This document shows positions 2,031-52,388 of a stretch of 64,000 nucleotides of DNA, in pieces (the first letter of the stretch is position 1; the number at the start of each line of letters is the position of its first letter). The notes beneath the pieces are model-generated. The model worked only from the letters and a program-made list of their open reading frames with translations. It was not told the origin of the DNA and made no database searches. This stretch comes from Selaginella moellendorffii (lineage: Eukaryota > Plantae > Lycopodiophyta). A program made the position numbers and the translations under genes. The DNA is taken from contig NW_003314312.1 of the NCBI RefSeq assembly GCF_000143415.4, positions 1,319,166 through 1,383,165 of the forward strand, in the 5' to 3' direction.

Positions 2031-2367
2031 NNNNNNNNNNNNNNNNNNNNNNNNNNNNNNNNNNNNNNNNNNNNNNNNNNNNNNNNNNNNNNNNNNNNNN
2101 NNNNNNNNNNNNNNNNNNNNNNNNNNNNNNNNNNNNNNNNNNNNNNNNNNNNNNNNNNNNNNNNNNNNNNNNNNNNNNNNNNNNNNNNNNNNNNNNNNNN
2201 NNNNNNNNNNNNNNNNNNNNNNNNNNNNNNNNNNNNNNNNNNNNNNNNNNNNNNNNNNNNNNNNNNNNNNNNNNNNNNNNNNNNNNNNNNNNNNNNNNNN
2301 NNNNNNNNNNNNNNNNNNNNNNNNNNNNNNNNNNNNNNNNNNNNNNNNNNNNNNNNNNNNNNNNNNN
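2031..2367. other. assembly gap (N run)
   Basis: 337 consecutive N. Confidence 1.
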
Positions 2368-10059: not shown

Positions 10060-11388
10060 AGTTGGTAGACTCTTTGACTCAGTATCTATGGTTAATAATG
10101 AATCCTCCTCACCAGAAAAAGTAGTATAATAATCTAGCTTGTGTCCAATTCATATGAGAAGAAAATACCCAAATGGGATAGCCCTAAATAAAAGAGTATC
10201 CTAATGAAGATTTTCCTAACCAAAATCATTGTCAGCTCCCACAAATGCCAATTCCTTATAAAGAAAAAATAAATCTAGCAAAACAAAAAGAGGAAAAGAC
10301 ATAAAAGATGTTATGGAAACCACTTGGTAGGATGTGGATACATGATTTCACTCAAAAAAAAATGGAGAAAAAAAAAAAAAACAAAATCAAACTCCAACAC
10401 TCAAAACAAATTGCTTTAAGAGAAATACATTTTCATTGAAATCTCTTGACTTTGCCCACTAAATTAAGTGTGGATGGACTTATTGGAAAGACTAAACTCA
10501 AATAAAAAAACAACAAAAAGTATGAGCTAAAACACTAAAATGCCTAAGAAAAATCGAATCAAACATTAAATTCTAAGCAAAGAGAAAGAGAATAAAAGAA
10601 AATGCCCTCCCTAGTACAAGAAACACTCATTTCTGGCATTAGTGGATGGCAATAGTATGGCTGTGATAATCTCCATGTATCAAGCTAAAATATTGCTATC
10701 TTAAGTTGTGAAGTGTTGCAAGTGAAAAATTGCTACCTCTCGTGGCCTAGAGTGAATTGACTGCCAGGAAAGGACTCACCAGAAATTTTGTCTCTAGATT
10801 TATATGCCCAGAAAATAAATTCCTAAATCAGTCTCAAAATCACAAACTTAAAGCATTAGAAATTGCCATGAAAACAAAAGAGTGCAATGGACAATAAGGC
10901 ACTCTTTAGTTTGTTGGAAAGAGGACACCAAAATGCACTAACCTAAAGAAAAAAAAAACCAAAATTGATATTTTAATCATGCAAAAAACCAAGTAGAAAG
11001 AGGATAATATGGAAAACTAATGCAAGAACATGAAAACCTTTGAGTCATGGAAGTAAAAACCCTTAGCAGTCCTAGCGCTTCTAAAAACATGAAACTAACC
11101 ACTATACCTTAAGATCTTTCTCAATTTCTCAAGAGAACTTTCCAATCTTTTAAAAAAATTAGTCTAGCTCGTCATGATTGTTGAGGCATTTTTCAACCCC
11201 AACCACAACTTCATCCCTCACACACACACTCACAAACTCACAGTTCCAAACTCAAGCCAAGCTCAAGCTCAAGAGAAAACTCAAGCCTCTCATAGGCTTA
11301 CATACAAGAATGAAAGATTATTTTAAGGTCTCTCAAGCCAGAACCTAAACTGTGACGCGAGGAGAAAGCAGTGAACCACAACAGTATG
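10060..11388. repeat. repeat shared with 61330-62089 (likely LTR/5' leader of the adjacent element)
   Basis: Collinear identity from ggtagactc-ttgact-agtatctatggttaa to ctaaactgtgacgcgaggagaaag-agtgaaccacaacagtatg. Confidence 0.75.
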
Positions 11389-11389
11389 A

Positions 11390-11676
11390 AACTTCCCCAA
11401 TGATGGCAGCTGGATCCAAGGGCTTCTTCCCTATTGTCATCATCCATAGACCATGCTGGTCCATGTATAATTCAAATTTGGTCTTCCAGGTATGCCAGTT
11501 CTTCCCATTGAATTGGAGCGGCATCCACTGCCACGTGACATCAACTAAATTGGAAGCCAATGCAGAATCTGCCCAATTGTCCCAAATGCTATCAAGTCTC
11601 AAAGGATTGCTCAGATCCCTTTCCCATTCGCTCTACCTCAGACTCATAGCTCTGTATACTATGACGAACTGCTGAC
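11390..11676 (-). mobile_element. Ty1/copia gag N-terminal fragment
   Basis: QFNGKNWHTWKTKFELYMDQHGLW matches the copia gag N-terminal pattern (F.G.N...W...M...L...GLW). Confidence 0.6.
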
Positions 11677-11719: not shown

Positions 11720-12000
11720 TGTTGTAAAAGACAGGTCCGATCCCCTGGAAGTGGTACAAGCCATAGTCTCCAAGGAGGATGTAGCAAATATTGCTCTTTG
11801 GCAAGAAGTGAGCTTGAGATGACAACCGCTGGCACAGTTCCCCGTTTCATGAAGAGGTTTGGTCCATACTGCTTGGACAGGGCATGCAATGAGAGGAAGG
11901 GAATTCCTGCGAGATGAAGGAGGGGCAATCCCCAGGGAGATGGAGGCAGCTTAAGGTGCAGCAAATATTTCCTTAAGGCAAGGAGAGTCCCCACAATCGT
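11720..12000 (-). pseudogene. cytochrome P450-B 5' fragment (paralog of 43147-44690)
   Basis: KYLLHLKLPPSPWGLPLL...SKQYGP...GDYGLYHFQGIGPV nearly identical to the 43147 gene; ATG lost, internal deletions, truncated. Confidence 0.9.
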
Positions 12001-12256
12001 GAATGTCAAATTTGTGAAGATTTGAGAAGCAACTAGCCCTTGGCATTTTATGCTTGCTTCTTTGAGACTTGCTTGAGAATTCTAGTCAACCACAACTTTG
12101 ACGAGCGCCACACTTGAATTGACTTGATCTTGATGCAACAATCTTTCAAGTCACTATAGATGGACTCATTGGCTCCCAACGAAAAACGTTGCTGGTTCTT
12201 GTTTCTGTTGTTTCAGTGAAAGACGGCCAAACTTGACAAGCAATATAAAAGTTTAA

Positions 12257-13793
12257 TTATATAGCTTTTGGGACTCTTGAAGAAACAACAACCTCAAGTG
12301 GTGTTTCCAACCAGAGAACAGTCCCACTTTGTTCCTTGAGCTCGTAACAATCCATGCCTTTGCCAGGAACAAAGCTCCAGTCGAAAGAGTGAATCAAGTT
12401 AAACAATAGCAATTGAGCAGTCTTCAATCCCAGTGACATCCCCGGACACATTCTTCGGCCCGCACCAAATGGAAGCAGCTCAAAGTCCTGGCCTTTTACG
12501 TCAATCGAGTTCCCAAGGAACCTTTCCGGCTTGAATTTCAATGCATCCTCCCATACTGCCGGATCTCTTCCAATTGCATAACCATTGACAAATGTGGAAG
12601 TTCCTTTGAGAATGTCATAGCCAGCAACCTTGCACGCTCATGTGAATCAGCAGCGGAGCTGGAGGATGAATGCGAAACGCTTCCTTGACGATTGCCTGAA
12701 GGTACTCCAGTTTGTCAAAGTCGCTCTCCGCAACAAGGCATTCCTTTCCAACAACGGTGTCAATCTCTTCCTGGGCCTTTTGAAGAATAAGTGGATTGTG
12801 CATGAGTTCCAACAGCGTCCATTCAATCAAACTAGCGCTGGTATCTCCTCCAGATAAAAGCTCCTGCATAATTCGAGATTAGCCAACATTTCTATAAGAT
12901 AAGCGTTGACTTTGTTACCGTGACAATAGCTTTGACCGATAACGTTGACTTTGTTCCTCTCCCCGGGCTCCTTCGCTTTTCAAGCTTTGCAGCATGGTAT
13001 CCATGAAATCTTTGGGCTGCGAGGTATTGGACTCGAGCCTAGCCTTGTGGGCATCTAAAATTCTCTGCAAGAACTTGTCTTGTCTCGCATGTATCCTCTT
13101 CATCTCTGGGATCTTCCAGTCAATCCGTCTCATGAACGCCGGTACGAACTCACTGATGTGGAATTGAAGCATCTGCTCGGTGATTTCAAACACAATGTGC
13201 TTGAAATCCTCGGCCTCACTGCTCATCTCAGCCTCATGCTCACCATACTCGAAGAAACGCTTGCTCATCAGGATCTGCATGACAACATTGAAGACATGTT
13301 GTCAGGAGGTGCTCATGTTGATTGGCTTCTGAAAGTCAGCCGCATTCACAAGCTCAGACAAGACGCCACGCATTTCTCTCGTTCGCACCCCTTGAAACGA
13401 TTCAATGCGCTTGACAGTAAAGAGCTCTGTAGCGCAAAGCTTCCTCATTCTTTTCCAGTAGTCGCCATACGGAACAAAACCAATGTCTCGGAAGTTGTAG
13501 AAGTTGTACTCCCCCATGATCAAGTATGGCCTCGAGGCAAAATTTGCATCCTGGATCTTTAGTACCTCTTTCACTAGCTCCGGACTGGAGATCACCACAG
13601 CTGGTACCATTCCCAGGCGTAAAAACACAATCGGTCCATACTTTGTGGAGAGTGCCTGGAATGAAAGGTGTAGCATTCTTCCCAAGAGATGCAAGTGACC
13701 GATAAGAGGTAGCCCCATGGAGATGGAGGCAAATTAAGCCGCCATGAAGAGAAGAGTGATCAACAAAACAACTGCGTATTGAGCAAACTCCAT
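12257..13793 (-). pseudogene. cytochrome P450-A (CYP71 clan), full length but frameshifted; intron 12864-12918
   Basis: MEFAQY start at 13793, PPSPW, ExxR (KEAFR), PERF and heme motif PFGAGRRMCPG are present; frameshifts or deletions near 13740, 13715, 13300 and 12640. Confidence 0.9.
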
Positions 13794-14409
13794 TACTGAT
13801 TCAAAGTATCAAACGTGACAGCCTGAAAGAAGGATGGATCGATGATCTATCGATATAAACATTGGTTGCATCTAACAGTCCATGTGAGTGGCTTTGACTT
13901 GATATTTCAACACGTATGTTCTTATTTTCTTGCTAAACTATTGCTTAAAACTTAGTGGTCCAAGTTTGACGATTTTATGCAATTATTGATCAAGATATTT
14001 TATGGAGCCGGCAATGTAGAAAAGCAACTTATATCGGTCTCATGCTTGTAAACAATATATGAATGAAGGAATATGTTGAAATGTTCAAGTGTAGTCAGTT
14101 TCTTGGAAGACTTGGATTCTAAGGTTCTAGTCTCCTAAGAAATAAGACTGAGCATAGAATAACGCTGCCATACCCAAGCACCCCACTTCCAGCGTGAGGA
14201 ATGGCTCGGCTGGGTGAACTACATACATGACAAAGTGTTCGGTGATCATCCGAATTGCGTCAAAAAATTTAACACTCAAGCATTCTCAGTTTGCAAGAAT
14301 TAGAATGACAAATAGCCATGCATATGAAACATTGATTTTCACTTCGTCCGTAGCTAGTTTACAAAAGGCCACACTACTAAGAGAAAAATAGATGGAAGTA
14401 CATCGATTT

Positions 14410-15230
14410 TCATATCAGGTTTAATAAATTTTGGATCTGGTTGAGTTTGTTTGAACTTGCCACCACATTGCAACTTTTCGGGTCCGACACGATGATGGTG
14501 CGCTTTGGATCCAGAATCCAAGTCCCACGAAACGTGCCTCCACTCAGTAGGTTATCCACGCCATGGTAGTGGCTGCTCGCATACACCAGATTCGCTGGGA
14601 TTGCGCAGGAGAGAACATCCAGGAACTTCAGGAAATCTTTCTTCCCATTCCGGGACGCATTCGCGGCAAGGATATCGCGGTAAAAGATGAATTCGTCTTC
14701 CTTGTCCTGGATCATCCTCCACGTAGTGTTCACGGCGTCCTGAAACGTCTGCACGCTCTGATCGGTGAGCAGCACCGCCGGAAGATTGTTAAACTTATTC
14801 TTGTAAAACTCCTTGAGAAACGAGAAGACGTCGTTCACCATCCACATATGATCGAGCATAGCGTTCTGAGCACTGATGTAATCCAGGGATTCAACATCCT
14901 CATCGTCAAATAAAGCACCCATTGAAGACGTTCTTCCTCCGGTCTAGAGCTTGTAGTCCTGCGTCAAGTCGTCACTCAAGATGCTTCTTGCCCAGCCCTG
15001 AACAGTGGAAACCGTGAGCTTGAACAGCTCCGGCTTCAACAGAGACCTCAAATCCTTCATCAGATCGTGGCACGCTCGATAGGCAAGAATATCCGGAACT
15101 TCCGCGAGCGATGCGGTTCCATAGCAGAGGCTATGAACAGTGTCGATATACGATGACGCGAGAGCTCCAGCAACCTCGTTGTCATCAAATGGATCGTCCA
15201 GGAAAGCAGTGAGCCAGGGAAACTTCGCCT
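14410..15230 (-). pseudogene. MTPSL: microbial terpene synthase-like (MTPSL) gene, 5'-truncated
   Basis: Intronless; DDxxD-type FLDDPFDD (~15181-15205) and NSE/DTE-type NDVFSFLKE; TAG and indels near 14945; RY dyad mutated to HY; no N-terminus. Confidence 0.85.
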
Positions 15231-15289
15231 GCTTCGCTTCGAATAACTATTGACGGTTCAAGCCTTGAGACTGGTTGTTGCTCAGCGGT

Positions 15290-15297
15290 TTATAAAA
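15290..15297 (+). promoter_or_regulatory. candidate TATA box of P450-C
   Basis: TTATAAAA about 40 bp upstream of the ATG at 15333. Confidence 0.45.
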
Positions 15298-15332
15298 TGA
15301 TATCAATGTGGCGTAATTCCTAATCAATCGAC

Positions 15333-16906
15333 ATGGAGTTTCTAGCGTGCGCGATTGCTCTTGTGTTCTTCATCTATGTTCTTGTATGGGGAATTCCAGG
15401 TGGAGGGCACCGCCGTCTCAACTTGCCAGTATCACCCAGTGGGTCTCTTCCATTGATCGGACACCTCCACCTCTTTGGGAGGAAACCCCATCTCTCTCTC
15501 CTTGCACTGTCCAACAAGTATGGACCGATCTTCTCTCTCCGGCTGGGAATGGTGCCATCCGTGGTGGTCGCGAGCGCCCATCTGGCCAAGGAGCTCTTCA
15601 AAACCCAGGACGTTACATTCTCTTCCAGGCCGTATTTCATGCCAGGGGAGTATAGCTTCTACAACTTCCTTGACATGGGATTTGCGCCTTACGGCGATTA
15701 CTGGAAGAACATGCGGAAGCTGTGTGCCACGGAGCTCTTCACAATCAGGCGCATCGATTCTTTCTTGTGGGTACGAACAGAGGAGCTCCGTGAGATGCTA
15801 TCCGCGCTCTTGGATTCTTCTCTGGATTGCAAGCCCGTCAACATGAGAGACATGGTCACGACATGCCTGTTCAATGTGGTCACCCGGATCTTGATGAGCA
15901 AGAGGTTCTACACGTTTGTGGGAGATGAGGCAACGATGGATGACGATGCCCGGGAGTTTAAGAGCCTCCTGCTGTCCATCACAGACCAGGCGCTCGATTT
16001 TCACATCAGCGAGTTTGTCCCGCCGTGGCTTAGAGGCATCGACTGGAAGATCCCGCGGCTCAAGAAGCTGCAGGCAAAGATTGATAGTTTCTTGCAGAAG
16101 ATAGTCGACGAGCACAAGCTTGGTGTCGATAGCGGCAAGGAGGACTTTATGCACATCATGCTCGAGTACCTCAAGGATGAACCATATTGCGAGGACAGTG
16201 TCAAGGCCAATAGCATGGTAAGTTCTTCCTCTCGTGATTTGATGTCTCTTAACTATATCCTCGAATGTGCCAGGAGCTTATATCTGGTGGAACAGACACA
16301 AGTGCCGCCGTGATCGAGTGGGCGATCCTGGAGCTTCTTCACCACCCGGAGATGCTACGAAAAGCTCAAGAGGAGATGGACGTGGTGGTGGGGAATTCTC
16401 GCCTGGTCGGAGAAGCCGACATTGCGCAGCTCCAGTATATGCAAGCAGTGATCAAGGAAACCTTCCGCCTCCATCCTCCAATTCCTCTTCTACCTCGCAT
16501 GGCATCTCACGACTGCAAGCTGGGAGGATTTGATGTTCCAAAGGGCGCAACCACGTTCTTGCACGTCTACGCCATTGGAAGGGATCCAGCCGTGTGGGAC
16601 GAACCATTGAAGTTCATGCCGGAGAGGTTCTTGGGGAATTCCTTGGATGTCAAGGGCCAGGACTATGAGCTGCTTCCATTTGGCTCTGGTCGCAGGGGTT
16701 GTCCGGGGATGATACTGGGATTACGAACGGTGCAGCTTCTGGTATCCAACTTGATTCACAGCTTCGATTGGAGCTTTGCGGGGGAGAGGGGAGGAGAAGC
16801 ATTTCCTCTGGAAGAACGAGATACTGCTGGGACTGTTATTTGGACCAAGACTCCGCTCCAAGTCGTGGCCACTCCAAGACTTAGGAAGGAGGTACTGCTA
16901 GGCTGA
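15333..16906 (+). CDS. cytochrome P450-C (CYP71 clan), intact, 505 aa; exons 15333-16217 and 16274-16906
   Basis: N-terminal TM anchor, LPLIGHLH, I-helix SGGTDT, KETFR, PERF, PFGSGRRGCPG; 56 bp phase-0 GT-AG intron at the conserved A-type position; no stops after splicing. Confidence 0.93.
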
Positions 16907-16989
16907 TTGCGATTTCATGAAATGGGCTTGCAAATATGTCCTCGTTATTTAAAAATTTCTTTTCATAAACTGTTTATACACGGTGTCGT

Positions 16990-17311
16990 GTGCATGAAAC
17001 CAAAAGGTATAATAAGCATGCTGTACTGATGAGTGAGGCTGCAACAGAACTCCTCCCAATCGTCTCTACTGTCGTTGTGGTCACCCTGCTTCATTGCGAA
17101 GTAAACTGACCATTGAATGTACAAGGTAAGAGTGGGAAGTTTTTTTGTACAGCTTTTCTCTGAGAAAATGTTTCAAACTGAAAGAGCCAATGCAATGTCA
17201 AGTCAAAAAAAGTTTTAAATGAAAGGTCAAAAATAAACTTTGAAATTAAAAACAAATGTAACTCTAAAGGATCAGCTAAAATTCCACAGTTCTCAGCTAT
17301 GGCATGAGGGG
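16990..17311 (-). pseudogene. 3' remnant (last codons and 3' flank) of an SDR gene paralogous to 51001-52388
   Basis: caaaaggtataataagcatg...gatgagtgaggc...cgtctctac-gtcgttgt-gtcacc-tgcttcattgc and ...ggcatgagggg align to 50765-51080; cut by the LTR at 17313. Confidence 0.7.
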
Positions 17312-17312
17312 T

Positions 17313-20206: not shown

Positions 20207-22862
20207 GCTTCACATTGCTGATCTATCGAAACCTTACGAGGTGACATGTGATGCGAGTGGTTATGCATTGGGAGGAGTTCTCATACAAGAGGGACAGCCT
20301 ATTGCATATGAGAGTTGAACTTTAAATTCCGTGGAGCAACACTATTCCACATATAAGCAAGAGTTACTCTCTATTGTTCATGCTTTGCGGACATGGCGGC
20401 ACTATCTTTATGGTACAGTGTTCGTGGTGTTGACAGATCACAAACCACTTGTGTATCTTTTCACACAGAAGGAGTTGAACACTCGGCAAGCTCGTCGAAT
20501 GGTCAAACTTATGGAGTTTGGGGAGTTTCCTATTGAGCATCGTCCAGGAAAATCCAATATGGTGGCAGATGCTTTATCTCGTGTTCGTCATGTGACAACG
20601 TTACAAACACGATTTTGTCATCATTTGAGTAAGGTGGTCAGCGAGTTTGGGCAGTTGGTTGAGCATGCTCAGGCTCAGGATGCTGAGGTGGCCTCTTTGC
20701 GAGCCCAGATGGAAGTCCCTTTTTCATTGGTGGATGGGATTCTCTACTACAATAGCCGTGTATATTTGCCACGGGTGGATGTGTTAATTACTCAAGTTTT
20801 ATTCCACTATCATGATCGTCCAGAGGCCGGTCATTTTGGGGGGAAGAAGACGTATAAGTTGATTAAGCCCAACTTTTATTGGAGGAATATGAAGGCTGAT
20901 ATCCTCAAGTATTGTAAATCATGCGAGCTTTGTCAGCGGGTTAAGGTGCCACGGGAGAAGCCAGGAGGACTTTTGCAACCTTTACCTATTCCTCAGAGCC
21001 ATTGGTGTAGTATCTCTATGGACTTCATCACTTATTTGCCACGAACACAGAGGCAAAAGGAGCAAGTATGGGTCGTAGTGGATCAGTTGACGAAATATGT
21101 GCGGTTGTTGGCTCTTCAAAAGAATGTCACTGCCTCAGACTTGGCTGCGGTTTACTTGGAGAAGGTTTTTCCTGATTTTGGTTTGCCGGAGGACATCATT
21201 AGTGACAGGTTTGCCGGAGGACATCATGTTTTGCGGACGTGGCAGCATTATCTTTATGGTGCAGTGTTCGTGGTGTTGACAGATTACAAACCACTTGTGT
21301 ATCTTTTCACACAAAAGGAGTTGAACACTCCGCAAGCTCATTGGATGGTCAAACTCATGGAGTTTGGGGAGTTTCCTATTGAGCATCGTCCGGGAAAATC
21401 CAATGTGGTGGCAGATGCTTTATCTCGTGTTCGTCATATGACGACGTTACAAACACGATTTTGTCATCATTTGAGTAAGGTGGTCAGCGAGTTTGGGCAG
21501 TTGGTTAAGCATGCTCAGGCTCAAGATGCTGAGGTGGCCTCTTTACGAGACCAGATGGAAGCTCTTTTCTCATTGGTGGATGGGATTCTCTACTACAATG
21601 GCCATGTATATTTGCCACGGGTGGATGCATTAATTACTCAAGTTTTATTCCACTATCATGATCGTCCAAAGGCCGGTCATTTTGGGGGGAAGAAGACGTA
21701 TGAGTTGATTAAGCGCAACTTTTATTGGAGGAATATGAAGGCTGATATCCTCAAGTATTGTAAATCATGCGAGCTTTGTCAGCGGGTTAAGGTGCCACGG
21801 GAGAAGCCAGGAGGACTTTTGCAACCTTTACCTATTCCTCAGAGCCATTGGTGTAGTATCTCTATGGACTTCATCACTTATTTGCCACGAACACAGAGGC
21901 AAAAGGAGCAAGTATGGGTCGTAGTGGATCAGTTGACGAAATATGTGCGGTTGTTGGCTCTTCAAAAGAATGTCACTGCCTCAGACTTGGCTGCGGTTTA
22001 CTTGGAGAAGGTTTTTCCTGATTTTGGTTTGCCGGAGGACATCATTAGTGATCGAGATTCAAAGTTCACCAGTGGATTTTGGAAAAGCTTTGCAAAGGCT
22101 ATGCAAGTGACTTTGAAACTCTCGAGTGGAGATCATCCTCAGACGGATGGGCAAACCGAGCATGTGAATCAGGTGGTGGAAGATATGCTACGTTGTAGCA
22201 TTGGTCAAAGGCAAGGACAGTGGGATTTATATCTTCCGTTGGTGCAATTTGCTTACAACAATAGCCAACACAATGGAACCAAACTAAGTCCTTACTTTGC
22301 CATGTTTGGAAGGCATCCTCGAATAGCAGTGGAGTTGGGATTGCATTAGAGTAAGGATGTTCAAGATAAGCTTGATTCCGAGGCAACTGATCTGACCACA
22401 CAACTTGATGAGATTTTGGTGGTGTGCGAATGAAATTTGCAAGCAGCTCAGGATAGAGTGGAGAAGTTTGCCAATGAGCATCGCCAATTCCGGGAATATA
22501 AGGTGGGTGATCTCGTCTTTGTGCGCGTGATCTTTCCGTCAAGTGAGCGGCAGAACACATTGGTGCCTTTACGGATACGGAAGAGTGATAAACTTTCCTA
22601 TTGATATGCTGGTCCATATGAAGTTCTGGAATGCATTGGTAAAGCGGCTTATAGGGTGCGGCAGCCAGCTGGGGTGAAAATTCATCCGGTATTTTATGTC
22701 AGCCAATTGAAAGGTGTACTATCTCGGAGTGACGGGCCCAATGCCTCCTTGATGTATACGGCTATGGACAATAGACTAGGAGCTTGAGCAAGGTTTCCCC
22801 AGAAAGGGTGATCACCGGTACAACTCGTCCTTGGGACAAGGACTTTGTTGGGGGGGAAGAAT
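20207..22862 (+). mobile_element. gypsy family A pol 3' half (RNase H, integrase) containing an 846 bp tandem duplication; PPT at 22850-22862
   Basis: CDASGYA, TDHKPL, ADALSR, HHCC zinc finger, SMDFI, SDRD, HPQTDGQTE, GPY/F; gggggggaagaat precedes the LTR. Confidence 0.9.
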
Positions 22863-23096
22863 TGTTAGGCACCAGCTTTGACTACGTGGTCAATGTCGGT
22901 CAAAGGGAGGCTCAAGGGTATATTAAGGCTAGTTAGGGTAAGGGACTTAACCTACCCTAGGGGCTCACAGTGGAGTGGCGGCGCAATGGAGCTTTTGAGG
23001 TAGCTAGGGGGTGATTGGGTGGTGAGGAACCTCAAGAGGTGGTGTAGTATAGTCTAGGGCGACTAGATCTCTATCTTTTTGCGCCGGATCATAACA
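22863..23096 (+). repeat. 3' LTR of gypsy family A (234 bp), followed by TSD ATGAT
   Basis: TGTTAGG...CATAACA; matches 36323-36556, 56869-57080 and 62090-62322. Confidence 0.9.
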
Positions 23097-29631: not shown

Positions 29632-32600
29632 CTCTCTCCCCCCCTTGGGGAAGATCGACATCCTCGTTGATGCATACCCGAGTCTAGCAAACTATCAAGG
29701 AAACAACTCCGAAAGTTAACGGAAAGCACACTATGTGGGAAACACACTGACTTAAATGAGTTATGGAACAACCTCTCTTCTAAGTCCAAAGACATTAAGA
29801 CTTAAACACCCTCCGGCCGTCACCGACAAGGAAATGACTAACAGAGTTAGCCACCCTTGCTGCTCCGAGTACCACTCGGCTTACAAAGGAATGATACATC
29901 TCTGCCTGCAAGGATATAGGGAGAAGGCCAAAGGCCCAACTGCCCCTGAGCAAGAAATCAACCCCGTTGGGAAGATTTAGACAACTATTATAAACTGGCA
30001 GATTAAGTTGTTTACATGACTACGCCCCTTTGCAAAAGTGAGTCATCGAGAGAGAGGCGGGGACTTGTGATCAGTCTATAATAGTTACCCCCTTGGTTAT
30101 GGATTGAACCTATGCACCGAAGTGCCGAAGTCAGTCTGCTAAAACTAACCCAAGTACGAACGAAGGATAGAAACGACACTTTGATTTATAGAAATATAGT
30201 ATTTTATTAATTTGCAAGATTTATTACAAGATTTACAAAAGCTAGTTTTTATTACTATTCTCATACTCCATGACAAGCTCACGGGCATGTGTAAGATTAC
30301 TAAAAGGCTCCCAAGTTGATTCACAAGTTGGGTAACCTTTCCACTTAACTAGATATTCCTTCAACACGAGCCTGTCTCCGGAACCGGGAATCCAAGATAG
30401 TTTCCACTTTGTATTCAGGTTCACCATCCACAACGTCTGGTGGCGGATGAATCTCCTCTTGACATGCAACATCCATAGTGTAAGGAGCCAATAGATTGGC
30501 ATGAAATACATTATGAACATTGGACATCTCTGCAGGCAGATCCAACCAATAGGATACATCACCAATGCATTTTAGCACCCGATAGGGTCCAACATATCTC
30601 GGCAAGAGCTTTCGAGAAAAAGAACCCTTAATGTTCAAGTTTCGGGAAGATAGCCACACCTGATCTCCCACTTGATAGGATACATCCCGACGATGCTGAT
30701 CCTTATCACGTCGATACCTATCCTGAGCTTTGCCCATCACCTCAGTAGCTCTAGACCAACCTTGGCATAGCTGCTCCGCATAAGTTTCAACGGCTGGGAC
30801 CAACACTTCAGTTATTGGTTTCGGTACAACAATCTGTTGAGGAACCCTAGAAGCATTTCCTTGCAGCATCTCCCATGGAGAATAGCCTATAGCGCTGTGA
30901 AATGTGTTGTTATAACATATTTCTGCTGTATCCAAATGCTCAACCCAGTCGCGTTGGTCCGCCGCGACATAGTACCGCAGATAATCCTCAACTTGAGCAT
31001 TCACGCGTTCAGTCTGCCCATCAGTCTGAGGATGATAAGCCATACTAAACTTTAATTTGGTACCAAACAACTGGAACAGTGTGCCCCAAAACTTCCCTGT
31101 AAACCTCGAATCCCTATCCGAGATCATCTCTTTAGGAAGACCACGAACCCGCACTACTTCATGGAAAAAGAGCTTTTCTACTTGTTTCGCATTCACTATT
31201 CCCACAGTTGGAATGAAGTGTGCAATCTTCGACAACCGATCCACAACCACCATCAAAGTATCATAACCCTTAGACTTCGGCAAGCAAGTGACGAAATCAA
31301 GTGTCACACTCTGAAATGGCCATGCCGGTGCTGGAATGCATTGCAACTTTCCAGCCTGCTTCTCAGCTTTGCGCTTACATTGCTAGCATATAGGGCAGGA
31401 ACAGACATAGTCCGCTATATCACCTTCCATACCAGACCAGAAAAATCCCTTTTTAAACAAAGCTAGAGTCTTTTGCTGTCCACCATGTCCCACTGCTGGA
31501 ACATCATGATGTTCCCGCAAAAATAACTGCTACAGATCCTTAGAGGGAAGATACAATCTTTCTTGCTTATAGAATATAAGCCCATCCCGAACTGAGAAGT
31601 GAAGCTTCGCATTAGTGTGACTAGCAACTTTTGCTGCTTCGCTACCAGGGCTTTGCTTCAACAACCCCGTACGGCATAAGATTGCCTTCGCCAATGGATC
31701 ACTTCCATATGAAACCTGAACGTCCTCCAACCAATCCGAACTAATTGCCGATATTGCCCGGAATTGAGCCTGACGACTCAACGCATCCGGAACAATATTG
31801 TCTTTACCAGGTTTATATATAATTTCAATATCATATCTAACAAGCTTCTCTTGCCAACGAGCTTGCTTCGGCGTAAGCTTAGGCTACGTAGCTCAGTGTG
31901 TTACTATCTGTATAAACCTTGGGTGTCTCCAGTGTTCCAAAGCCGACACTATAGCAAACATTTCTTTCTCATGCGTTGGCCATCTTCGTTGGGTTTCATC
32001 CAATTTCTTGGAATAGAATGCAACGGGACAACCATGTCGCCTTAGCGTAACACCAACCAATTTGTCACAATCTTCCTGTAACACAGCACCAATAGCATAT
32101 CCAAACGCATCACAATGCACCTCGAAGGTTTATCAAGATCTGGAATCTTGAGAACAGGAACCGTAGTCAAGATCTCCTTCAACCGTACAAAAGCACGCTA
32201 GCAAGCTGGTGTCCAATGAAACGGAATACTACTCTTCGTCAACTCAGTTAACGGAAGAGCAATCCTTGCAAAATTGCGGACAAACTTGCGATAGTATCCT
32301 GCCAAACCGTGAAAGGATCGAACATCTGATACAGTGGTCAGGACTTCCCAAGACTTCACCGCTTCCACCTTCTTTGGATCGACCTCAATCACGCCACCAC
32401 CAACTATATGTCCGAGAAAGTTTACATGCAATTGACCAAAAGCGCATTTACTTTCCTCAGCATACAATTTGTGTTCGCGCAACTTCTGAAACACCAACTC
32501 CAAGTGTTTCAAATGATCCTCCAACGTTTCGCTGAAGACTAGAACATCGTTGATATATAGGACAACAAATGTGTCCAAATAATCTCCGAATATTCTATCC

Positions 32601-36322: not shown

Positions 36323-36556
36323 TGTTATGATCCAGCGCAAAAAGACAGAGATCTAGTCGCCCTAGACTATGCTACACCACCTCTTGAGGTTCCTCACCAC
36401 CCAACCACCCTCGAGCTACCTCAAAAGCTCCACTACGCCGCCGCTCCACTGTGAGCCCCCAGGGTAGGTTAAGTCCCTTACCCTAACATGCCTTAATATA
36501 CCCTTGAGCCTCCCTTTGACCGATGTTGACCACGTAGTCAGAGCTGGTGCCTAACA
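36323..36556 (-). repeat. 5' LTR of gypsy family A (234 bp), flanked by TSD ATGAT on the minus strand
   Basis: Reverse complement of 22863-23096 with about 15 substitutions counted by eye; atcat at 36557-36561. Confidence 0.9.
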
Positions 36557-36861
36557 ATCATGTTGTGATATTGAGGGACTAAACTCAATATGCAAGGGTT
36601 CCTACTAAGCCAATGCAAGATAGAGCAAAAAAGAACTAAAAGCTAAGCCAAGAATGCTTAGCAAAAAAAATATAGAAGTTCCTACCTTATATTCATTTGG
36701 TTGAGTACAGATGCTAAACCTAGTTTACTAACACTTGGACAAGAGGGGCTATTGAAAGGAACTAATAGTACTAATCTTTTGCCGTCATAGTAGTAAAAAG
36801 AGACTGCTCGTAAGAACTACCTAACAAGTATCTTCCAATACCTGAAATCATATTTGCAACA
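36557..36861 (-). repeat. 5' part of a family B LTR (the other half of 23097-23789)
   Basis: Reverse complement matches 17968-18263 (gtccctcaatatcac; tgt-gc-aat-tga-ttc-ggtat). Confidence 0.75.
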
Positions 36862-39935: not shown

Positions 39936-40235
39936 GAAGACGAATTCATCTATTACTGTGATATCCTTCCTGCAAATGCTTCCCAGAATAGGAAGAAAGA
40001 TTTCCTGAAGTTCCTGGATGTTCTCTCCTGCGCAATCCCAGTGAATCTAGTGTTCCACTATGCGAGCAGCCGCTACCATGGCATGGATAACCCCCTACTG
40101 GGTGGAGGCACATTTCGTGGGACTTGGATTCTGGATCCAAAGTGCACCATGATCATGTCAAACCCGAAAAGGTGCAAAGCAGTTGCAAGTTCAAACAAAC
40201 TCAACCAGATCCAAAATTTATCAAACCTGATCTGA
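39936..40235 (+). pseudogene. MTPSL: MTPSL C-terminal fragment (second copy)
   Basis: EDEFIYYCDIL...FLKFLDVLSCAIPVNLVFHYASSRYHG...NLSNLI* is collinear with 14410-14700 and retains the RY dyad. Confidence 0.85.
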
Positions 40236-41435: not shown

Positions 41436-42850
41436 ATGGAGTTTGCTCAATATGCATTGTTTTGTTGATCACTCTTCTCTTCTTGCTGCTATCTTTCAAG
41501 CGTCCATAATTTGCCCCCATCTCCATGCTGCTCTTGGGAAGAATGCTACACCTTTCATTCCAGGCACTCTCTCAAAGTATGGACCGATTGTGTTTTTACA
41601 CCTGGGAATGGTACCAGCTGTGGTGATCTCCAGTCCAGAGCTAGCAAAAGAGGTACTAAAGACCAGGATGCAAATTTTGCATCGAGGCCATACTTGATCA
41701 TGGGGGAGTACAACTTCTACAACTTCCGTGGTTTTGTTCCTATGGCGACTACTAGCATGAGGAAGCTTTGCGCTACAGAGCTCTTTACCGTCAAGCGCAT
41801 TGAGTCGTTTCAAGGGGTGCGAACGAGAGAAATGCGTGGTGTCTTGTCTGCGCTTGTGAATGCGGCTGACTATCAGAAGCCAATCAACATAGGCACCTCC
41901 TGACAACATATGTCTTCAATGTTGTCATGCAGATCCTGATGAGCAAGCGTTTCTTCGAGATGGTGAGCATGAGGCTGAGATGAGCAGCGAGGCCAAGGAT
42001 TTCAAGCACATTGTGTTTGAGATCACCGAGCAGATGCTTCAATTCCACATCAGTGAGTTCGTACCCGCGTTCATGAGACAGATTGACTGGAAGATCCCAG
42101 AGATATATGCGAGACAAGACAAGTTCTTGCAGAGAATTATAGACCACCACAAGGCTAGGCTCGATTCCGAGACCTCGCAGCCCATAGATTTCATGGATAT
42201 CATGCTGCAAAGCTTGAAAAGCGAAGGAACCCGGGGAGAGGAATAGGTCAAAGCTATTGTCACGGTAACAAAGTCAATGCTTATCTTATAGTAATGTTGG
42301 CTAATCTCGAATTATGCAGGAGCTTTTATCTGGAGGAGATACCAGCGCTAGTTTGATCGAATGGACGCTGTTGGAACTCATGCACAATCCACTTATTCTT
42401 CAAAAGGCCCAGGAAGAGATTGACACCGTCGTCGGAAAGGAACGCCTTGTTGCAGAGAGCGACTTTGACAAACTGGAGTACCTTGGGCAATCGTCAAGGT
42501 CCAGCTCTGCTGCTGATTCACATGTCAGCCGAAGCGTGTAAGGTTGCTGGCTATGACATTCCCAAAGGAACTTCCACAATTGTCAATGGTTATGCAATTG
42601 GAGGAGGTCCGGCAGTATGGGAGGATGCATTGTGATTCAAACCGGAAAGGTTCCTTGGGAACTCGATCGACATAAAAGGCCAGGACTTTGAGTGTCATGT
42701 CACTGGGATTGAATGCTATTGCTTAACTTGATTCACGCTTTGGACTGGAGCTTTGTTCCTGGCAAAGGCATGGATTGTTACGAGCTCAAGGAACAAAGTG
42801 GGATTGTTCTGTGATTGGAAACAACAAGATTCCCAAAAGCTATAACTAAA
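41436..42850 (+). pseudogene. cytochrome P450-A second copy; intron 42265-42319; heme-binding motif deleted
   Basis: Near-identical to 12257-13793 in reverse; multiple frameshifts, TAG at 42244, loss of LLPFGAGRRMCPG after GQDFE. Confidence 0.9.
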
Positions 42851-43146
42851 TTAAACTTTTATACTAATCATAAAAATGTGAGTTTGTTCCTATCACTAGA
42901 AGCTAATTTTAAAGATGAAAGGTCACTGAAACAACAGAAACAACAACCAGCAATTGGGAGTCTTGAGTCCATCTATAATGACTTGAAAGATTGTTGCATC
43001 AAGATCAAGTCAATTCAAGTGTGGCGCTCGTCAAAGTTGTGGCTGACTAGAATTCTCAACAACCAAGTCTAAAGAAGCAAGCATATAATTGCCAAGGGCT
43101 ATTTGCTTCTCAAATCTCAAATCTTCACAAATTCAACATTCACGAT

Positions 43147-44690
43147 ATGGGGACTCTCCTCTATGTCATAATCTTGCTTGCTTTTGTCTATGTCTTAAGG
43201 AAATATTTGCTGCACCTTAAGCTGCCTCCATCTCCCTGGGGATTGCCCCTCCTTGGACACCTTCATCATCTTGCAGGAATTCCTTTCCTCTCATTGCATG
43301 CCCTGTCCAAGCAGTATGGACCAATTCTTTTCATGAAGCTGGGAACCGTGCCAGCGGTTGTCATCTCAAGCTCGGTTCTCGCCAAAGAGGTGTTGAGGTC
43401 GCAAGATCAGATGTTTGCTTCCAGGCCTTACATCCTCGTTGGAGACTATGGCTTGTACCACTTCCAGGGGATCGGACCTGTCCCTTACAACGATCACTGG
43501 AAGATGATGCGAAAGCTCTGCGCCACGGAGCTTTTCACTCCCAAGAGGATCGATTCGTTTCTCCCAATCAGGCTAGAGGAGATCACCGGCATGTTTTCGG
43601 CGCTTCGAGGTGCTGGAGCGCACAAAGCTGTGGACATGAGGAACATGTTGTCGATCTTCACCTTCAATGTCATGACCCGGATTCTCATGAACAAGAGATT
43701 CTTCGAGTACGGGGAGGATGAGGAGCACATCGATGGCGAGGCCAAGCAGTTCAAAGACATTGTGTTCGAGACAGCAGACCAGGGACTCCAGTTTCATATC
43801 AGCGAGTTCATCCCGCACTGGCTCCGGTGGATTGATTGGAAAGTCCCGGAACTGAAGAGGCTCCATGCGAAGAAGGATAAGTTTCTCCAGAACATCCTTG
43901 ACCAGCACAAGGACATGGCATCGACAAAGGAACACAAGGACTTCATGGACATCATGCTGCAAAATCTAGAGCACAGAGGAGCAGCCAGGGAGGATTTCAT
44001 CAAGGCAGTAGTCCTTGTAAGTTTCCCCACACAACTTGTTTTGGTCACCAATCTCAAAACCATTTTGATCTGCAGGAACTCACCATTGCGGGGACCGATA
44101 CAAGCGCTTGCATTGTCGAATGGACCCTTCTGGAGCTCCTTCACAACCCCCGAGTCCTGAGTAAGCTCAAGGAAGAGCTTGATGCTATGGTAGGATCAAG
44201 TAGTCACATGGTCGAGGAGCCCGATTTCCAGAACCTGGACTACCTCAACGCGGTGATCAAGGAAGCTTTTCGTCTCCATCCACCTCTGCCGCTCCTCATT
44301 CCTCACATGTCGACTCAGACTTGCACCATAGCCGGCTTTCACGTCCCAAAAAATGCCTTCTCGTTTGTCAACGAATACCCATACCGAAAAAAAGCAGGGG
44401 TATGGGAAAAGGCGGATGAGTTTTGGCCGGAGAGGTTTCTTGGTAAGTCCGTGGATGTTAGAGGCCAGGACTTTGAGTTGCTTCCATTCGGATCTGGGCG
44501 ACGGGCTTGTGCGGGAATGCAGCTGGGCTTGAAGACTGTCCAGCTTTTGGTGTCCAATTTGGTCCATGCTTTTGACTGGAGCTTTGTTCCAGGCAAACCG
44601 AGTGAAGATTACCTCCTTCAAGAACGTCATGGCACGGTTAACTGGATCAAGACCCCATTACAAGTTTGTGTCGTTCCTAGGACCAGATAG
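43147..44690 (+). CDS. cytochrome P450-B (CYP71 clan), full-length open frame, 494 aa; exons 43147-44016 and 44076-44690
   Basis: TM anchor, LPPSPWGLP, I-helix IAGTDT, KEAFR, PERF, PFGSGRRACAG; 59 bp GT-AG intron; aberrant NEYPYRKKAG where AIGRDP is expected. Confidence 0.85.
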
Positions 44691-47899: not shown

Positions 47900-50500
47900 C
47901 ATATACACCTCCTCCTCAAGATCACCCACCATTGAGGAATGCTGTGTGCACATCAAGTTGATAGAGCTCAAGATCAAGCTCAGCTGCTAAAACTAGAAGC
48001 AAGCAAATGGTGGTTAACTTAACTACCCGACTGTGATCTGAATTTGCGAGAAGCCACAAATGACAAATCTGGCTTTGAATTGCTCCACACTCCCATCTGC
48101 CTTTGTACTTCTTTTTAAAGAGCCACTTGGAGCTCATGACTTTCCTTCCTGGTGGCAATGGCATGAGAGTCCAAGTGTCATTTTTAAGCAAAGAAGAATA
48201 CTCATCTTGTATCACTTCTTGCCACTTTTGAGCGTCAGGACTAGCAAGAGCCTCCATATATCCTTGAGGCTCAGGAAGGCTTTGCATTGCCCAGTAGAAT
48301 CATTTCTGTCGTGGTTCCTGGGCAATGGCCTCAAGCACTTTGACTGAAAGCTTGGTTACACGTTCAGAGCGTCGTGGACCAAAGACCTGTGGAGGTGGAG
48401 GAGTCATCACTGGGTCAACTGAAATATTTCATCGCCTAAAATGTCGTCGACGATGGCAACAAGCGAGGGCTCAGCTGAAGAAGTGGGACTGCTGGTGGAA
48501 GCAGTAGAAGGTGCAAGAAGTGGCGTGTGAGGAGGAGATCTATCACCTCCAGCCACCAAGGGCACTGCTCGGCCAGGATCTTGTGGGCCTTGGTTGTTAG
48601 CTCCTCCTGGAGGAAGTACCTTTGAGGTCTCGATACAGCTCTTGCTCGTTGAAAATCACATCGCGGCTCACTACAAGCTTCTTTTGGAAGAGATTATAGA
48701 GCCGGTAGGCCTTGGCCCCCGAAGATGGTCTTCGTGCTGCGTGGATCGAGCTTGCGCCTGTTCGGATCAGGGATGCGGGCGTACGCACTGCACCCAAAGA
48801 TCCGGATGTGCCCTCAATTTGGACGTTTCCCAGTCCAAACGTGATGCGGGATCAAGCCTGTGCTCCGGGTGGGCAAACGGTTACGCAAGTACACCGTCGT
48901 GTTCACTGCTTCTCCTCAGAAGCTGTGTGGCAGTCCGGAATGTAGAAGAAGGCAACGCACCATATCCAAGAGCGTCCGGTGCCACTGGTGTATAAGCAGC
49001 CGTGTACTGGTGAGAAATTCCTACCTCAGCTAGGAATTGGAGAAATCCTTGTGCAATGTATTCTCCTCCGCCATCTGTGCGTAGCACACTGATTTTTCTT
49101 CCTGTAAAATTTTCTGCCCAGCTTTTGAAAATTTTAAAGTTTTCAAAAACTTCGGATTTGTTTCGTACCAAACACACCACTGTGTATCGTGAGTGATCAT
49201 CTATGAATGAAACAAAATACCTCTTCCCACTTAGGGAATTTACAGGAAGATAGCAACCTTCGCTGTGAATAAGATCAAGCACTGCTGTGGCCTGGTTTTC
49301 CAAAGGTCGGGGAGGAAAAGGATAGCATGCATGTTTGCCAAGTTGGCAAGTCCCAGATGTCCAGATGGAAATGCGATGCCATCCTTCTCATTTACATGCC
49401 CGAGACGAGCATGCCAAAGATGAATTGTCTCTTGGCCTTGAAGCGCTAGCATGTATGTCCCTGGATAAACAAGCTCTGCGTTGAGGCGATAGAGTGTATC
49501 GTACCTCACTGCCATCTGCTCCAAAAATAGTACATCCTTCTGCAAAGAATGTGAGCGAGAACCCTTGATCGGAGGCAACGCCAACCGAAAGGACAGTCTG
49601 GCCTGCACCGGGCACATAGTGCATGTTATGGATTTCCTTGAGAGATCCATTGGGCAACTTGACTTACACCATGCCACGGCCTTCAACGTCGAGAGGTCGC
49701 TTGTCTCCAACAAAGACTTGTTTTGGGGAAAGCAATTCGTGGAAAGTGTGGAATGCTGTACGAAGAGGAGTCATGTGGTAAGAAGCACCACTGTCCAACC
49801 AGAGGATGTCTAAACCAGATCTCGCTCTATGTGCCCCATCTTCCCGCAGTAGGTACACGGCCCCTTCTTTTTCTTGTTTCCGAAGCCAGGTGTTGGTGTC
49901 GCAGGAGCACTGGCAAGTCCGCGAGAATTCCCATGCTTCTTGGCATTTCCATTTCCTGACTTCTTGCCGATGAACAAAGCCTGATCACGAGCAGAATCTG
50001 AGGAGGTCGTGCTTGCTTTTCGCTCCAGAAGCTTGCGCTCTTCTTCCAAGAGATTGGAATAAAGCTCGTCTAGGGTCTTTCCTGGAACGAAGGAGAACAT
50101 GGAGGAAGACGGTTGGAGTTCAGAAGAAACCGAATAGAGAAGGAAAGCTTTGGCATAATCGTCCGAGACAGGCGCGCCAGCCTCCTTAAGCTCTTGCATC
50201 TGCCAATGTACGATGCCATCGTGTCTGTTGGCTGCATCCGGAGAGAAAGGAACTTCTGGGTTAAGGACGATCTTGGCATTTGCTGCTTTCACAGCAACCT
50301 GCACCAAGGACTCCCAATTCTCGTGAGCGGTCTTCGAGAGATCCAGCAGATGGATGAACTCGTCGCCGAGTCCTAAGCCAATGACAGAGAGGGCTTGGCT
50401 TTCCACGCTGGCTGGAGAGCTGGTTCAGCTTCGGTGCCGTCCACGATTGTCCAGCAATCGTTTGCCATCAAGATGACCTTTGTTCTCTAGGTAAGTTTTC
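47900..50500 (-). mobile_element. Ty1/copia retrotransposon, internally deleted (gag, protease, integrase, RT start)
   Basis: CTYCGKMGHIERD, WLDSGASYHMT, LWHARLGH, FIDDHSR, LRTDGGGEY, EPQGYMEAL...KW, QLDVHTAFLNG in copia order. Confidence 0.9.
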
Positions 50501-50668: not shown

Positions 50669-50755
50669 CGGAGAAGCATTAAGTCATGGTCACTCCGAAG
50701 GAGGTACTCTTAGGCTGATTGATAAACCATAAGTACGGAGATTCCATGAAATGGT
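50669..50755 (+). pseudogene. 3' remnant of a second P450-C copy
   Basis: ggagaagcatt / aagtcatggtcactcc / gaaggaggtactcttaggctgattg / gattccatgaaatgg align in order to 16793-16925, including the stop codon. Confidence 0.7.
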
Positions 50756-51000: not shown

Positions 51001-52388
51001 TCAAGGATGAGACTTGATAAACTCCTCACTAAAAGTCCGCAGCTCTGCAGCCAACTTCATGTCCTTGGCATGAGGGGTGCAATCCGCTTCGTTGCAATCC
51101 AAGTAGTACTTTCCACTCACGCCCTCCATGCAAGGATGGACCGCAAGAAGCATGGTTGTAGCAGCGCCCTGAAAGAAATCACAGCTTTAATCCAGAAACG
51201 TAGGCTATGATATGTTTGTACCTGCGGGATGGATTTGCAAAGTGGGCTCGCAAGGAAGAGAAGCAGCTCTGCACAGCAGCACAAGTCGATCAATCTCAAT
51301 TCTTTTCAGATACTAACTTACTAGCTGAAGTCTGGTTGAAATCTCTTCCAAGGTTCGTCTTGATAGTTCCAGGATGAAGTGAATTTACAGTCACGTTGGC
51401 ACCCTTCTCCTGAAATGGAAGATCATCAAAATTATGTCTGGGAAAACTCGAGCACAAAAACTTTGAATCTATGGGCACCTTCAAGCGGCTTGCTAACTCC
51501 CTGGTATGCAGTATGTTGGCCAGTTTTGATCTTCCGTAGCTAGTAATCCATTGGAAGCTGCACGACGAGAGTTAAAGAAAATTCATTGGAAGATTGCAAG
51601 GAAAACCCAAATGCTTCCTCCTAATTATCAATTAAAAAACTAACCTGTTCTTATCATTCAGCTTGTCAAACTCAATCCCGCCTTTTGGAACATATCTGTG
51701 TCCTTCAGACGCCACCATGACAATCCGACCTTGCACTCCAGTTTGAGATGCAGTCTGGATCATCTTGTCCAACAGCAGCTCAGTGAGCAAAAACGGACCT
51801 GGATCATCATCCAAAGAGTGAAGGTTTTTCTAACAGACAAAACTTGAACACCATACCCATATGGTTTGTCGCGAAATCGAGCTCCAAGCCATCCGGTGAG
51901 AGCTGGAAGTTATTGGCCGTCATCCCAGCATTGTTTCTGCATTGATCCATGCATTTTGATCAGAAACACTAACAGGAGTGACTCACATGAGGATGTGGAG
52001 CGGGAGATTTAGAGCGTTGAAGTCGTCGACAAATTTCCTGACCGACTTGAGAGAGCTCAGATCCAACTCAAGAACAGTGACCCTTGCATTAGGGAATTCG
52101 CGTTGGATCTTGGACTTGGCTGCTTCAGCGTTCTGTAGCTTCCTGGCTGGGATAACAACGTGTGCACCGTGCTTGGCGAGAACTCTGGCAGTCTCAAACC
52201 CAATTCCGGAGGTAGCCCCTGTAGCTTGATAATGAGAAATCGAAGCAAACTACCGATGGAATCGGCATACCTGTGACGATTACCACTTTGGATTCCAGAG
52301 AAATCCCCTTTGCAACTTTCTCGGCTGTAGCTCCCGATCCAAAGCCTGTAGCGCCGCGGTATCCTGTGAAGTAGCTTATCACGCCCAT
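51001..52388 (-). CDS. short-chain dehydrogenase/reductase, TIC32/retinol-dehydrogenase-like, intact, 321 aa, 8 exons (52388-52271, 52218-51987, 51936-51857, 51798-51645, 51557-51479, 51409-51322, 51268-51222, 51168-51001)
   Basis: [24 protein letters not shown] (YxxxK), LHPG; all introns GT-AG (50-87 bp); exon sum 966 nt in frame. Confidence 0.9.

What the first reader, a model, noticed from the sequence alone, without database searches (positions are those of the whole stretch)
11720..17311. The whole cluster was duplicated and then lost genes reciprocally
Seen: MTPSL, P450-A and P450-B with their spacers (11720-14700, minus) recur inverted at 39936-43490. The P450-C 3' end plus SDR 3' end (16793-17311) recur in direct orientation at 50669-51080. 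The left copy keeps P450-C and only stubs of P450-B and the SDR. The right copy keeps P450-B and the SDR and only an ~85 bp stub of P450-C. One full-length copy of each of these three enzymes therefore survives, while MTPSL and P450-A died in both. Inference: tandem duplication, inversion of one sub-block, then complementary loss, possibly with selection keeping the tailoring enzymes for a substrate made elsewhere.
Basis: partly seen in the sequence, partly recalled or inferred. Interest (0 to 1): 0.78.

Follow-up and report, generated by a model that had tools for sequence, protein, structure and literature searches.

The report
Two decaying copies of a spikemoss gene cluster

Summary
Window 11721-14700 recurs inverted at 43491-39936. 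It carries the 3' part of the MTPSL gene, P450-A, the 5' end of P450-B and their spacers. A second, patchy homology runs direct, 16860-17312 against 50681-51078 (P450-C 3' end, spacer, SDR 3' end).

The window is S. moellendorffii. P450-C is CYP797H2 and P450-B is CYP797H4; both are intact annotated genes. The right SDR reads as an intact 8-exon, 321-codon gene. Both P450-A copies, both MTPSL copies, the left P450-B and the left SDR are dead. Right P450-C is reduced to about 43 coding bases.

- The same scaffold carries, outside the window, an intact A-type P450 (SELMODRAFT_115634, about 97.5% identical to dead A-left) and CYP797H6 (97.3% to CYP797H2). So there are at least three units, and the left unit's closest kin probably lies outside the window.
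- Divergence between the paired segments ranges from 5% to 18%. It is not uniform.
- Four of the five truncations abut retrotransposon fragments.
- The two P450-A copies carry different lesions and dN/dS is 0.45, so they died independently after duplication.

Selection for "one survivor each" is not shown.

The parts
11721..12005 (-). Left P450-B remnant (CYP797H4-type). The start codon is changed to GTG. It has 30-, 12-, 19- and 10-bp deletions, and homology ends at H4 codon ~115.
   Evidence: tblastn of P0001, 89-90%; nucleotide alignment; sister of CYP797H4 in the tree, 97/88
12260..13793 (-). Left P450-A pseudogene. Six indel lesions (about -16, -1, -1, -2, +14, -8 bp) give stops and frameshifts.
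   Evidence: tblastn against P0002; alignment; Pfam p450 on the pieces
14413..15246 (-). Left MTPSL remnant, headless. The ORF starts 13 codons before the DDxxD motif, so about 89-108 N-terminal codons are missing. There is an in-frame stop at 14944-14946, and the NSE/DTE motif is present. It is annotated as a 177-185 aa protein (SELMODRAFT_421430 / XP_024542657.1).
15333..16906 (+). Its ATG lies 87 nt from the MTPSL remnant.
   Evidence: tblastn 100% to P0005; name; splice sites and heme motif
16907..17312 (.). Left spacer between P450-C and the SDR, plus a degraded remnant of the last SDR exon (about 17255-17312). The rest of the SDR is absent, and a gypsy-family fragment follows from 17506.
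39936..40232 (+). Right MTPSL remnant: the last ~99 codons only, with no DDxxD or NSE motif. A gypsy RNase H fragment (38188-38427) lies upstream.
41436..42844 (+). Right P450-A pseudogene. About 17 indels (1 to 35 bp) and stops; none is shared with the left copy.
43147..44690 (+).
   Evidence: tblastn 100% to P0001; name
47925..50424 (-). Truncated copia-type retrotransposon (gag, integrase, start of RT). Its 5' side lies next to the P450-C stub, and no LTR pair was found.
   Evidence: Pfam Retrotran_gag_2, rve and RVT_2; self-BLAST
50681..50723 (+). Right P450-C stub: the last ~13 codons (with a 9-bp deletion) plus the stop codon.
51001..52388 (-). Right SDR gene (classical adh_short type). 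Eight exons, all GT-AG, consistent phases, 966 nt / 321 codons. TGxxxGIG, NNAG, YxxxK and PG motifs are present.
   Evidence: exon by exon; the joined model was not searched
10063..11632 (-). Copia-like element fragment (DUF4219 gag start at 11348-11632) that abuts the truncated left P450-B. A second copy lies at 61336-62089.

Best explanation
The window holds two paralogous units of a multi-copy block in Selaginella moellendorffii. The block is MTPSL, then CYP797H A-type, then CYP797H B-type, followed by CYP797H C-type convergent with an SDR (with a FAD oxidase next to the SDR in the right unit). Segmental duplication produced the units. Between the two units the MTPSL-A-B sub-block is inverted relative to C-SDR. 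After duplication the genes stayed under constraint for a while. They were then lost independently, by small indels (both P450-A copies, left P450-B) and by truncations, four of which lie next to retrotransposon fragments (left B, left SDR, right MTPSL, right C). The left MTPSL lost its head where it now meets CYP797H2. Within this pair the losses happen to be complementary: CYP797H2 survives only on the left, and CYP797H4 and the SDR only on the right. At least one more unit on the same scaffold keeps an intact A-type gene and a near-identical C-type gene (CYP797H6). So the pattern is birth-and-death turnover of an array, not a two-copy reciprocal resolution. Shown: the homology, orientations, lesions, intact ORFs, extra paralogues and heterogeneous divergence. 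Inferred: the order of events, the causal role of the TEs, and that the left unit is closer to the third unit than to the right one.
For: Inverted and direct homologies. Species and gene identities: (CYP797H2 and CYP797H4 at 100%). Lesions differ between A-left and A-right. dN/dS is 0.45 (A), 0.23 (B) and 0.52 (MTPSL). The headless MTPSL is shown by the PDB 9lpb register and by SELMODRAFT_428156, whose first 89 residues have no match anywhere in the window. TE domains lie next to the truncations. Extra units: P0002/P0123 and P0124/P0125 sit on the same 1,441,712-bp scaffold but are not encoded in the window, where the best matches are 96-97%. Of 400 comparable codons, A-left differs from P0002 at 7-9 and A-right at 22-24, while P0002 has only 1 private change. 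The tree has A, B and C clades at 100/100, with the B-left stub sister to CYP797H4. GenBank numbering places 115634 and H7P on the strand of the left MTPSL and H6 on the strand of H2 and H4.
Against: Its structure and its closer kinship to the left unit therefore rest on protein identities, accession order and an unchecked earlier scan note. The A-clade topology is unresolved. The divergence heterogeneity could be partly alignment noise in the indel-rich spacers. TE adjacency does not prove that TEs caused the deletions. No expression data were available, so 'intact' means an open reading frame only.
Confidence: 0.8

Rival explanations
1. One reading: one tandem duplication of the whole cluster, inversion of one sub-block, then reciprocal loss, with selection keeping exactly one copy of each tailoring enzyme for a substrate made elsewhere.
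For: Within the window the retention pattern is exactly complementary. dN/dS for B is 0.23, consistent with CYP797H4 being under constraint. The neutral-class divergences overlap broadly at 0.09-0.18.
Against: An intact A-type gene and CYP797H6 (97.3% to H2) lie on the same scaffold outside the window, and an H4-like gene lies on a 658-kb scaffold, so retention is not one-each. Divergence is heterogeneous: my hand-calculated chi-square on six neutral classes is about 16.5 with 5 df. No test of selection on retention is possible from two units.
Confidence: 0.15
2. Two-step or homogenised history. The A/B core of pair 1 (5-9% divergence) is either younger than the outer parts and pair 2 (15-18%), or has been homogenised by gene conversion between the inverted copies or with the third unit. 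This can hold alongside the best explanation.
For: p = 0.035-0.05 across 12599-13656, against 0.15-0.18 in the M-A spacer and pair 2. dS of A is 0.085 +/- 0.019, against 0.144-0.158 for B and M. P0002 sits on a zero-length branch at the A node.
Against: Past purifying selection on A and on the B promoter could also lower divergence. Standard errors are large for the short segments. No conversion tract boundaries were tested.
Confidence: 0.3
3. Assembly artefact: the two units are mis-joined haplotypes of one locus.
For: The S. moellendorffii assembly is known to contain both haplotypes (general knowledge).
Against: Substitution divergence of 5-18%, dozens of indels, a different gene content and about 34 kb of different TEs between the units are far beyond allelic variation. 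The two copies also lie in opposite orientation for one sub-block.
Confidence: 0.02
4. Gene-fragment capture by a transposon (Pack-MULE or Helitron type) copied the MTPSL-A-B block.
For: The block is surrounded by TEs.
Against: No terminal inverted repeats frame the block. It carries full-length genes with native spacers and introns. dN/dS below 1 shows the copies were functional after duplication. A second, separate homology (C-SDR) lies in the same neighbourhood.
Confidence: 0.03

Closest known systems
Birth-and-death evolution of tandemly duplicated plant specialised-metabolism genes (P450 and TPS arrays; Nei & Rooney model). General knowledge.
   Same: Repeated segmental duplication, independent pseudogenisation by indels and TE-associated deletions, and a mix of live and dead copies in one array.
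   Different: Here the duplicated unit is a multi-gene block (MTPSL, three CYP797H types, an SDR) and not a single gene. One sub-block is inverted between units.
Reciprocal gene loss / divergent resolution after duplication (Lynch & Force 2000; fractionation after WGD). General knowledge.
   Same: Within the two units of this window, alternative copies of B, C and the SDR were retained.
   Different: The classic case involves two copies only and has consequences for hybrid incompatibility or subgenome fractionation. Here further copies exist on the same scaffold, the two units are 34 kb apart on one chromosome, and two genes died in both.
TPS-CYP gene pairs and clusters in plants, and the head-to-head MTPSL gene pair with a bidirectional promoter in Marchantia (bioRxiv 10.64898/2026.07.16.738752). 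MTPSL family: Li et al. 2012, reviewed in PMC6779861.
   Same: A microbial-type terpene synthase lies next to P450s and a dehydrogenase, and the left unit has MTPSL head-to-head with a P450.
   Different: In both units here the terpene synthase is dead (headless, or only the last 99 codons), so no working cluster is shown. The Marchantia pair is CPT-MTPSL, not MTPSL-P450.

Membership tests
Cytochrome P450, CYP797H subfamily (CYP71 clan) | p450 domain with the heme-binding FxxGxRxCxG, ExxR and I-helix motifs; identity to named members | tested here: met
   Pfam PF00067, E 1e-26 to 4e-60. 100% tblastn identity to CYP797H2 and CYP797H4. Motifs present.
Microbial terpene synthase-like (MTPSL), functional member | Complete alpha-domain (~350-370 aa) with DDxxD and NSE/DTE motifs and an open reading frame | tested here: not met
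   Left copy: both motifs are present, but about 89-108 N-terminal codons are missing and there is an in-frame stop. Right copy: the last ~99 codons only. By homology both are MTPSL-derived (Pfam PF19086; 97% to SELMODRAFT_421430).
Classical short-chain dehydrogenase/reductase (adh_short) | Rossmann TGxxxGxG, NNAG and catalytic YxxxK motifs; an uninterrupted CDS | tested here: met
   Exon 2 hits adh_short positions 8-80 and exon 6 hits positions 170-193. The motifs were read. Eight GT-AG exons, 321 codons. The joined model was not searched.
Reciprocal gene loss after a single duplication | Two paralogous segments of equal age | tested here: inconclusive
   Paralogy is certain. Divergence ranges from 0.05 to 0.18, and dS from 0.085 to 0.158.
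Reciprocal gene loss after a single duplication | Each gene retained in exactly one of the two copies, with no other copies | tested here: not met
   The pattern holds inside the window. Outside it, CYP797H6, the intact A-type 115634 and CYP797H7P lie on the same scaffold, and an H4-like gene lies on another scaffold.
Plant biosynthetic gene cluster | Three or more non-homologous enzyme classes co-located | tested here: met
   MTPSL remnant, P450s, SDR and a FAD_binding_4 oxidase.
Plant biosynthetic gene cluster | Intact scaffold-forming enzyme, and co-expression or a shared pathway | tested here: not met
   MTPSL is dead in both units. Co-expression cannot be tested with these tools.

The most novel reading that the evidence does not exclude
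The surviving CYP797H2, CYP797H4 and SDR, split between two units 34 kb apart, still act together as a 'distributed' tailoring module on a terpene made by an MTPSL encoded elsewhere. On this reading, selection and not chance explains why the array keeps at least one copy of each while every local MTPSL copy has died.
Probability: 0.1. Interest if true: 0.5.

Novelty: new member of a known kind. Interest (0 to 1): 0.25.

Why it matters
The result gives a clean, base-level picture of how a lycophyte MTPSL/P450/SDR block turns over: duplication, inversion, a period of constraint, then independent death by indels and by truncations next to retrotransposons. It is also a caution for genome mining. 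The neighbourhood looks like a terpenoid gene cluster, and the headless MTPSL is annotated as a protein, yet no unit in the window has a working terpene synthase. It does not reveal a new mechanism.

Tried and rejected
2. Word search with the 177-aa MTPSL piece: it returned only the truncated local model and one 252-aa relative, because of the length filter. The relative was still enough to show that the head is missing.
3. PDB search with the 100-aa MTPSL piece: no hit.
4. PDB searches with SDR exons 4 and 8: only spurious designed-repeat proteins. Pfam on the short SDR exons: no hits except exons 2 and 6.
5. Protein tree to resolve which A copies are sisters: a polytomy.
6. Search for TIRs around the right block: none. 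TE capture rejected.
7. tblastn of the right FAD oxidase and SDR exons against the left unit: no FAD remnant, and only the remnant of the last SDR exon.
8. Literature: no paper on CYP797H or on this cluster.
9. The large representative search, structure prediction and fold search were not used, because the family scans left no protein open.
10. The joined (spliced) SDR model was not searched or folded. Only exon-wise references and phase arithmetic were used.
Full report
**Source and identity.** The window is from a 1,441,712-bp scaffold of Selaginella moellendorffii. A P450 exon query returned SELMODRAFT proteins at 100% identity, and tblastn places two of them exactly in the window.
- CYP797H4 (SELMODRAFT_115322) lies at 43147-44016 and 44076-44687, plus strand.
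- CYP797H2 (SELMODRAFT_421431) lies at 15333-16217 and 16274-16903, plus strand.
- Both genes have one short GT-AG intron, a stop codon, and the heme, ExxR and I-helix motifs.

**The observation: pair 1.** Pfam and tblastn show what it carries:
- the first ~115 codons of a CYP797H4-type gene;
- a whole A-type P450;
- the 3' part of an MTPSL gene;
- the spacers between them.

The right copy has about 600-730 extra bases in the MTPSL-A spacer.

**The observation: pair 2.** BLASTN sees only 16992-17097 against 50765-50857 at 83%. Local alignment with shuffling controls extends the homology to 16860-16925/50681-50754 and 17165-17312/50898-51078 (z = 10.7 and 13.1).
- The segment holds the last ~13 codons and stop of a C-type P450, the spacer between the convergent genes, and a remnant of the last SDR exon.
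- The stub matches the CYP797H2 3' end (score 28) and not the A or B 3' ends (scores 7-9).
- The stub is about 43 coding bases, not about 85.

**State of each gene.**
- **Left P450-A** has about six private indels that create stops and frameshifts. **Right P450-A** has about seventeen indels plus stops. None of these lesions is shared between the two copies.
- **Left P450-B** has lost its ATG, carries four deletions, and ends at codon ~115, next to a copia-like gag fragment.
- **Left MTPSL** keeps its DDxxD and NSE/DTE motifs but has an in-frame stop at 14944-14946 and no head. Its ORF starts 13 codons before DDxxD and only 87 nt from the CYP797H2 ATG.
  - The register against a 369-aa solved terpene synthase puts about 108 residues upstream.
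  - The close relative SELMODRAFT_428156 has 89 residues upstream, and these match nothing in the window.
  - JGI and RefSeq nevertheless annotate the left copy as a 177-185 aa protein.
- **Right MTPSL** is only the last ~99 codons. A gypsy RNase H fragment lies upstream of it.
- **Right SDR** reads as eight exons between 52388 and 51001. All splice sites are GT-AG, the phases are consistent, and it totals 966 nt or 321 codons with the TGxxxGIG, NNAG, YxxxK and PG motifs. Exons 2 and 6 hit adh_short. I checked it exon by exon and by phase arithmetic only. The joined model was not searched or folded.
- **Left SDR** is reduced to a degraded piece of its last exon, followed from 17506 by a gypsy-family fragment.
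- **Right P450-C** lies next to the 5' side of a truncated copia element at 47925-50424.

Four of the five truncations sit next to retrotransposon fragments. The exception is the lost head of the left MTPSL.

**Divergence between the two units.** These are substitution-only values, all measured with one method.

| Segment | p-distance |
|---|---|
| A gene | 0.051 |
| B stub | 0.064 |
| A-B spacer | 0.087 |
| MTPSL coding part | 0.094 |
| MTPSL-A spacer | 0.154 |
| Pair 2 | 0.18 |

Nei-Gojobori estimates:

| Gene | dS | dN/dS |
|---|---|---|
| P450-A | 0.085 +/- 0.019 | 0.45 |
| P450-B | 0.144 +/- 0.052 | 0.23 |
| MTPSL | 0.158 +/- 0.054 | 0.52 |

Two conclusions follow.
- dN/dS is well below 1 even for A, where both copies are dead, and the two copies carry different lesions. 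The genes were therefore still constrained for part of the time after duplication and died independently.
My hand calculation from the counts, over six roughly neutral classes, gives a chi-square of about 16.5 with 5 df. The A/B core is about half as diverged as the outer parts. Past constraint, gene conversion or a two-step history could each explain this, and I cannot separate them here.

**The array is larger than the window.** Cluster look-ups and tblastn show further paralogues on the same scaffold that are not encoded in the window:
- an intact 498-aa A-type P450 (XP_002982021.2 / SELMODRAFT_115634);
- CYP797H6 (SELMODRAFT_421437), 97.3% identical to CYP797H2;
- CYP797H7P.

A 658-kb scaffold carries an H4-like gene (97.6% identical) and an MTPSL.

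Over 400 comparable codons, dead A-left differs from 115634 at 7-9 sites and A-right differs at 22-24. The intact 115634 protein has only one private change and sits on a zero-length branch.
- A functional P450 that had diverged as long ago as the left-right split would be expected to show several private changes. This is my inference.
- Taken with the 97.3% H2/H6 identity, it suggests the left unit is closer to the third unit than to the right one.
- The protein tree leaves the A clade unresolved.

GenBank accession order places 115634 and H7P on the strand of the left MTPSL, and H6 on the strand of H2 and H4. The third unit therefore seems to share the left unit's orientation. This too is an inference.

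An earlier scan note (s1-334485) describes a decayed third copy starting 3771 bases beyond the window's end. Other notes describe head-to-head MTPSL-CYP797 pairs elsewhere in the genome.

**Verdict.** Duplication, inversion of one sub-block and complementary decay within this pair are all real. The step from there to a closed two-copy reciprocal loss, possibly held by selection, is not supported. A-type and C-type genes have further intact copies nearby, divergence is uneven, and most truncations lie beside TE fragments. The best description is ordinary birth-and-death turnover of a multi-unit CYP797H/MTPSL/SDR array. The alternatives fare as follows:
- Mis-joined haplotypes are excluded by the level and kind of divergence.
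- Transposon capture is unlikely: there are no TIRs, the genes are full-length with native spacers, and there was constraint after copying.

No literature on CYP797H or on this cluster was found. MTPSL background is from PMC6779861.

Noticed in passing
window 45395-45604 (+): An isolated, old SDR exon-2-like fragment (44% aa identity to the right SDR's exon 2, E 2e-11, with a stop inside) lies between CYP797H4 and the copia element. No other SDR exons were found around it.
   Followed up: partly
window 52671-54004 (+): A FAD_binding_4 oxidase gene lies head-to-head with the right SDR, in two ORF pieces (52671-53486 and 53597-54004). It seems to stop about 340 codons in, just before a gypsy-family fragment at 54129-54523. 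An 84% palindrome lies at 53851-53952. No remnant of this gene lies in the left unit.
   Followed up: partly
window 40537-41269: The right MTPSL-A spacer has about 600-730 extra bases that are absent from the left copy. They include a 22-nt inverted repeat (40807-40828 / 40934-40955), so this may be a small insertion element.
   Followed up: no
window 14289-14922 (-): The headless, stop-containing MTPSL remnant is annotated as a protein in both JGI (SELMODRAFT_421430, 177 aa) and RefSeq (XP_024542657.1, '(E)-2-epi-beta-caryophyllene synthase-like', 185 aa). The model starts at a Met after the in-frame stop and lacks the DDxxD motif.
   Followed up: yes
window 20207-23096, 55096-57080, 62090-63997; also 30348-36558: There are several gypsy-type retrotransposon copies, 89-96% identical to one another, including a tandem-like pair at 20378-21205 / 21224-22051. 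The two cluster units are islands within this TE-rich stretch.
   Followed up: no
outside the window: 658,485-bp scaffold: SELMODRAFT_130230 (97.6% to CYP797H4) and the MTPSL model SELMODRAFT_428156 lie on another scaffold. The MTPSL model has the N-terminal head but skips the NSE region. In the tree the left B stub groups with CYP797H4 and not with 130230, so 130230 may be a further paralogous unit and not simply the other haplotype.
   Followed up: partly
window 2031-2367: An assembly gap of 337 N.
   Followed up: no
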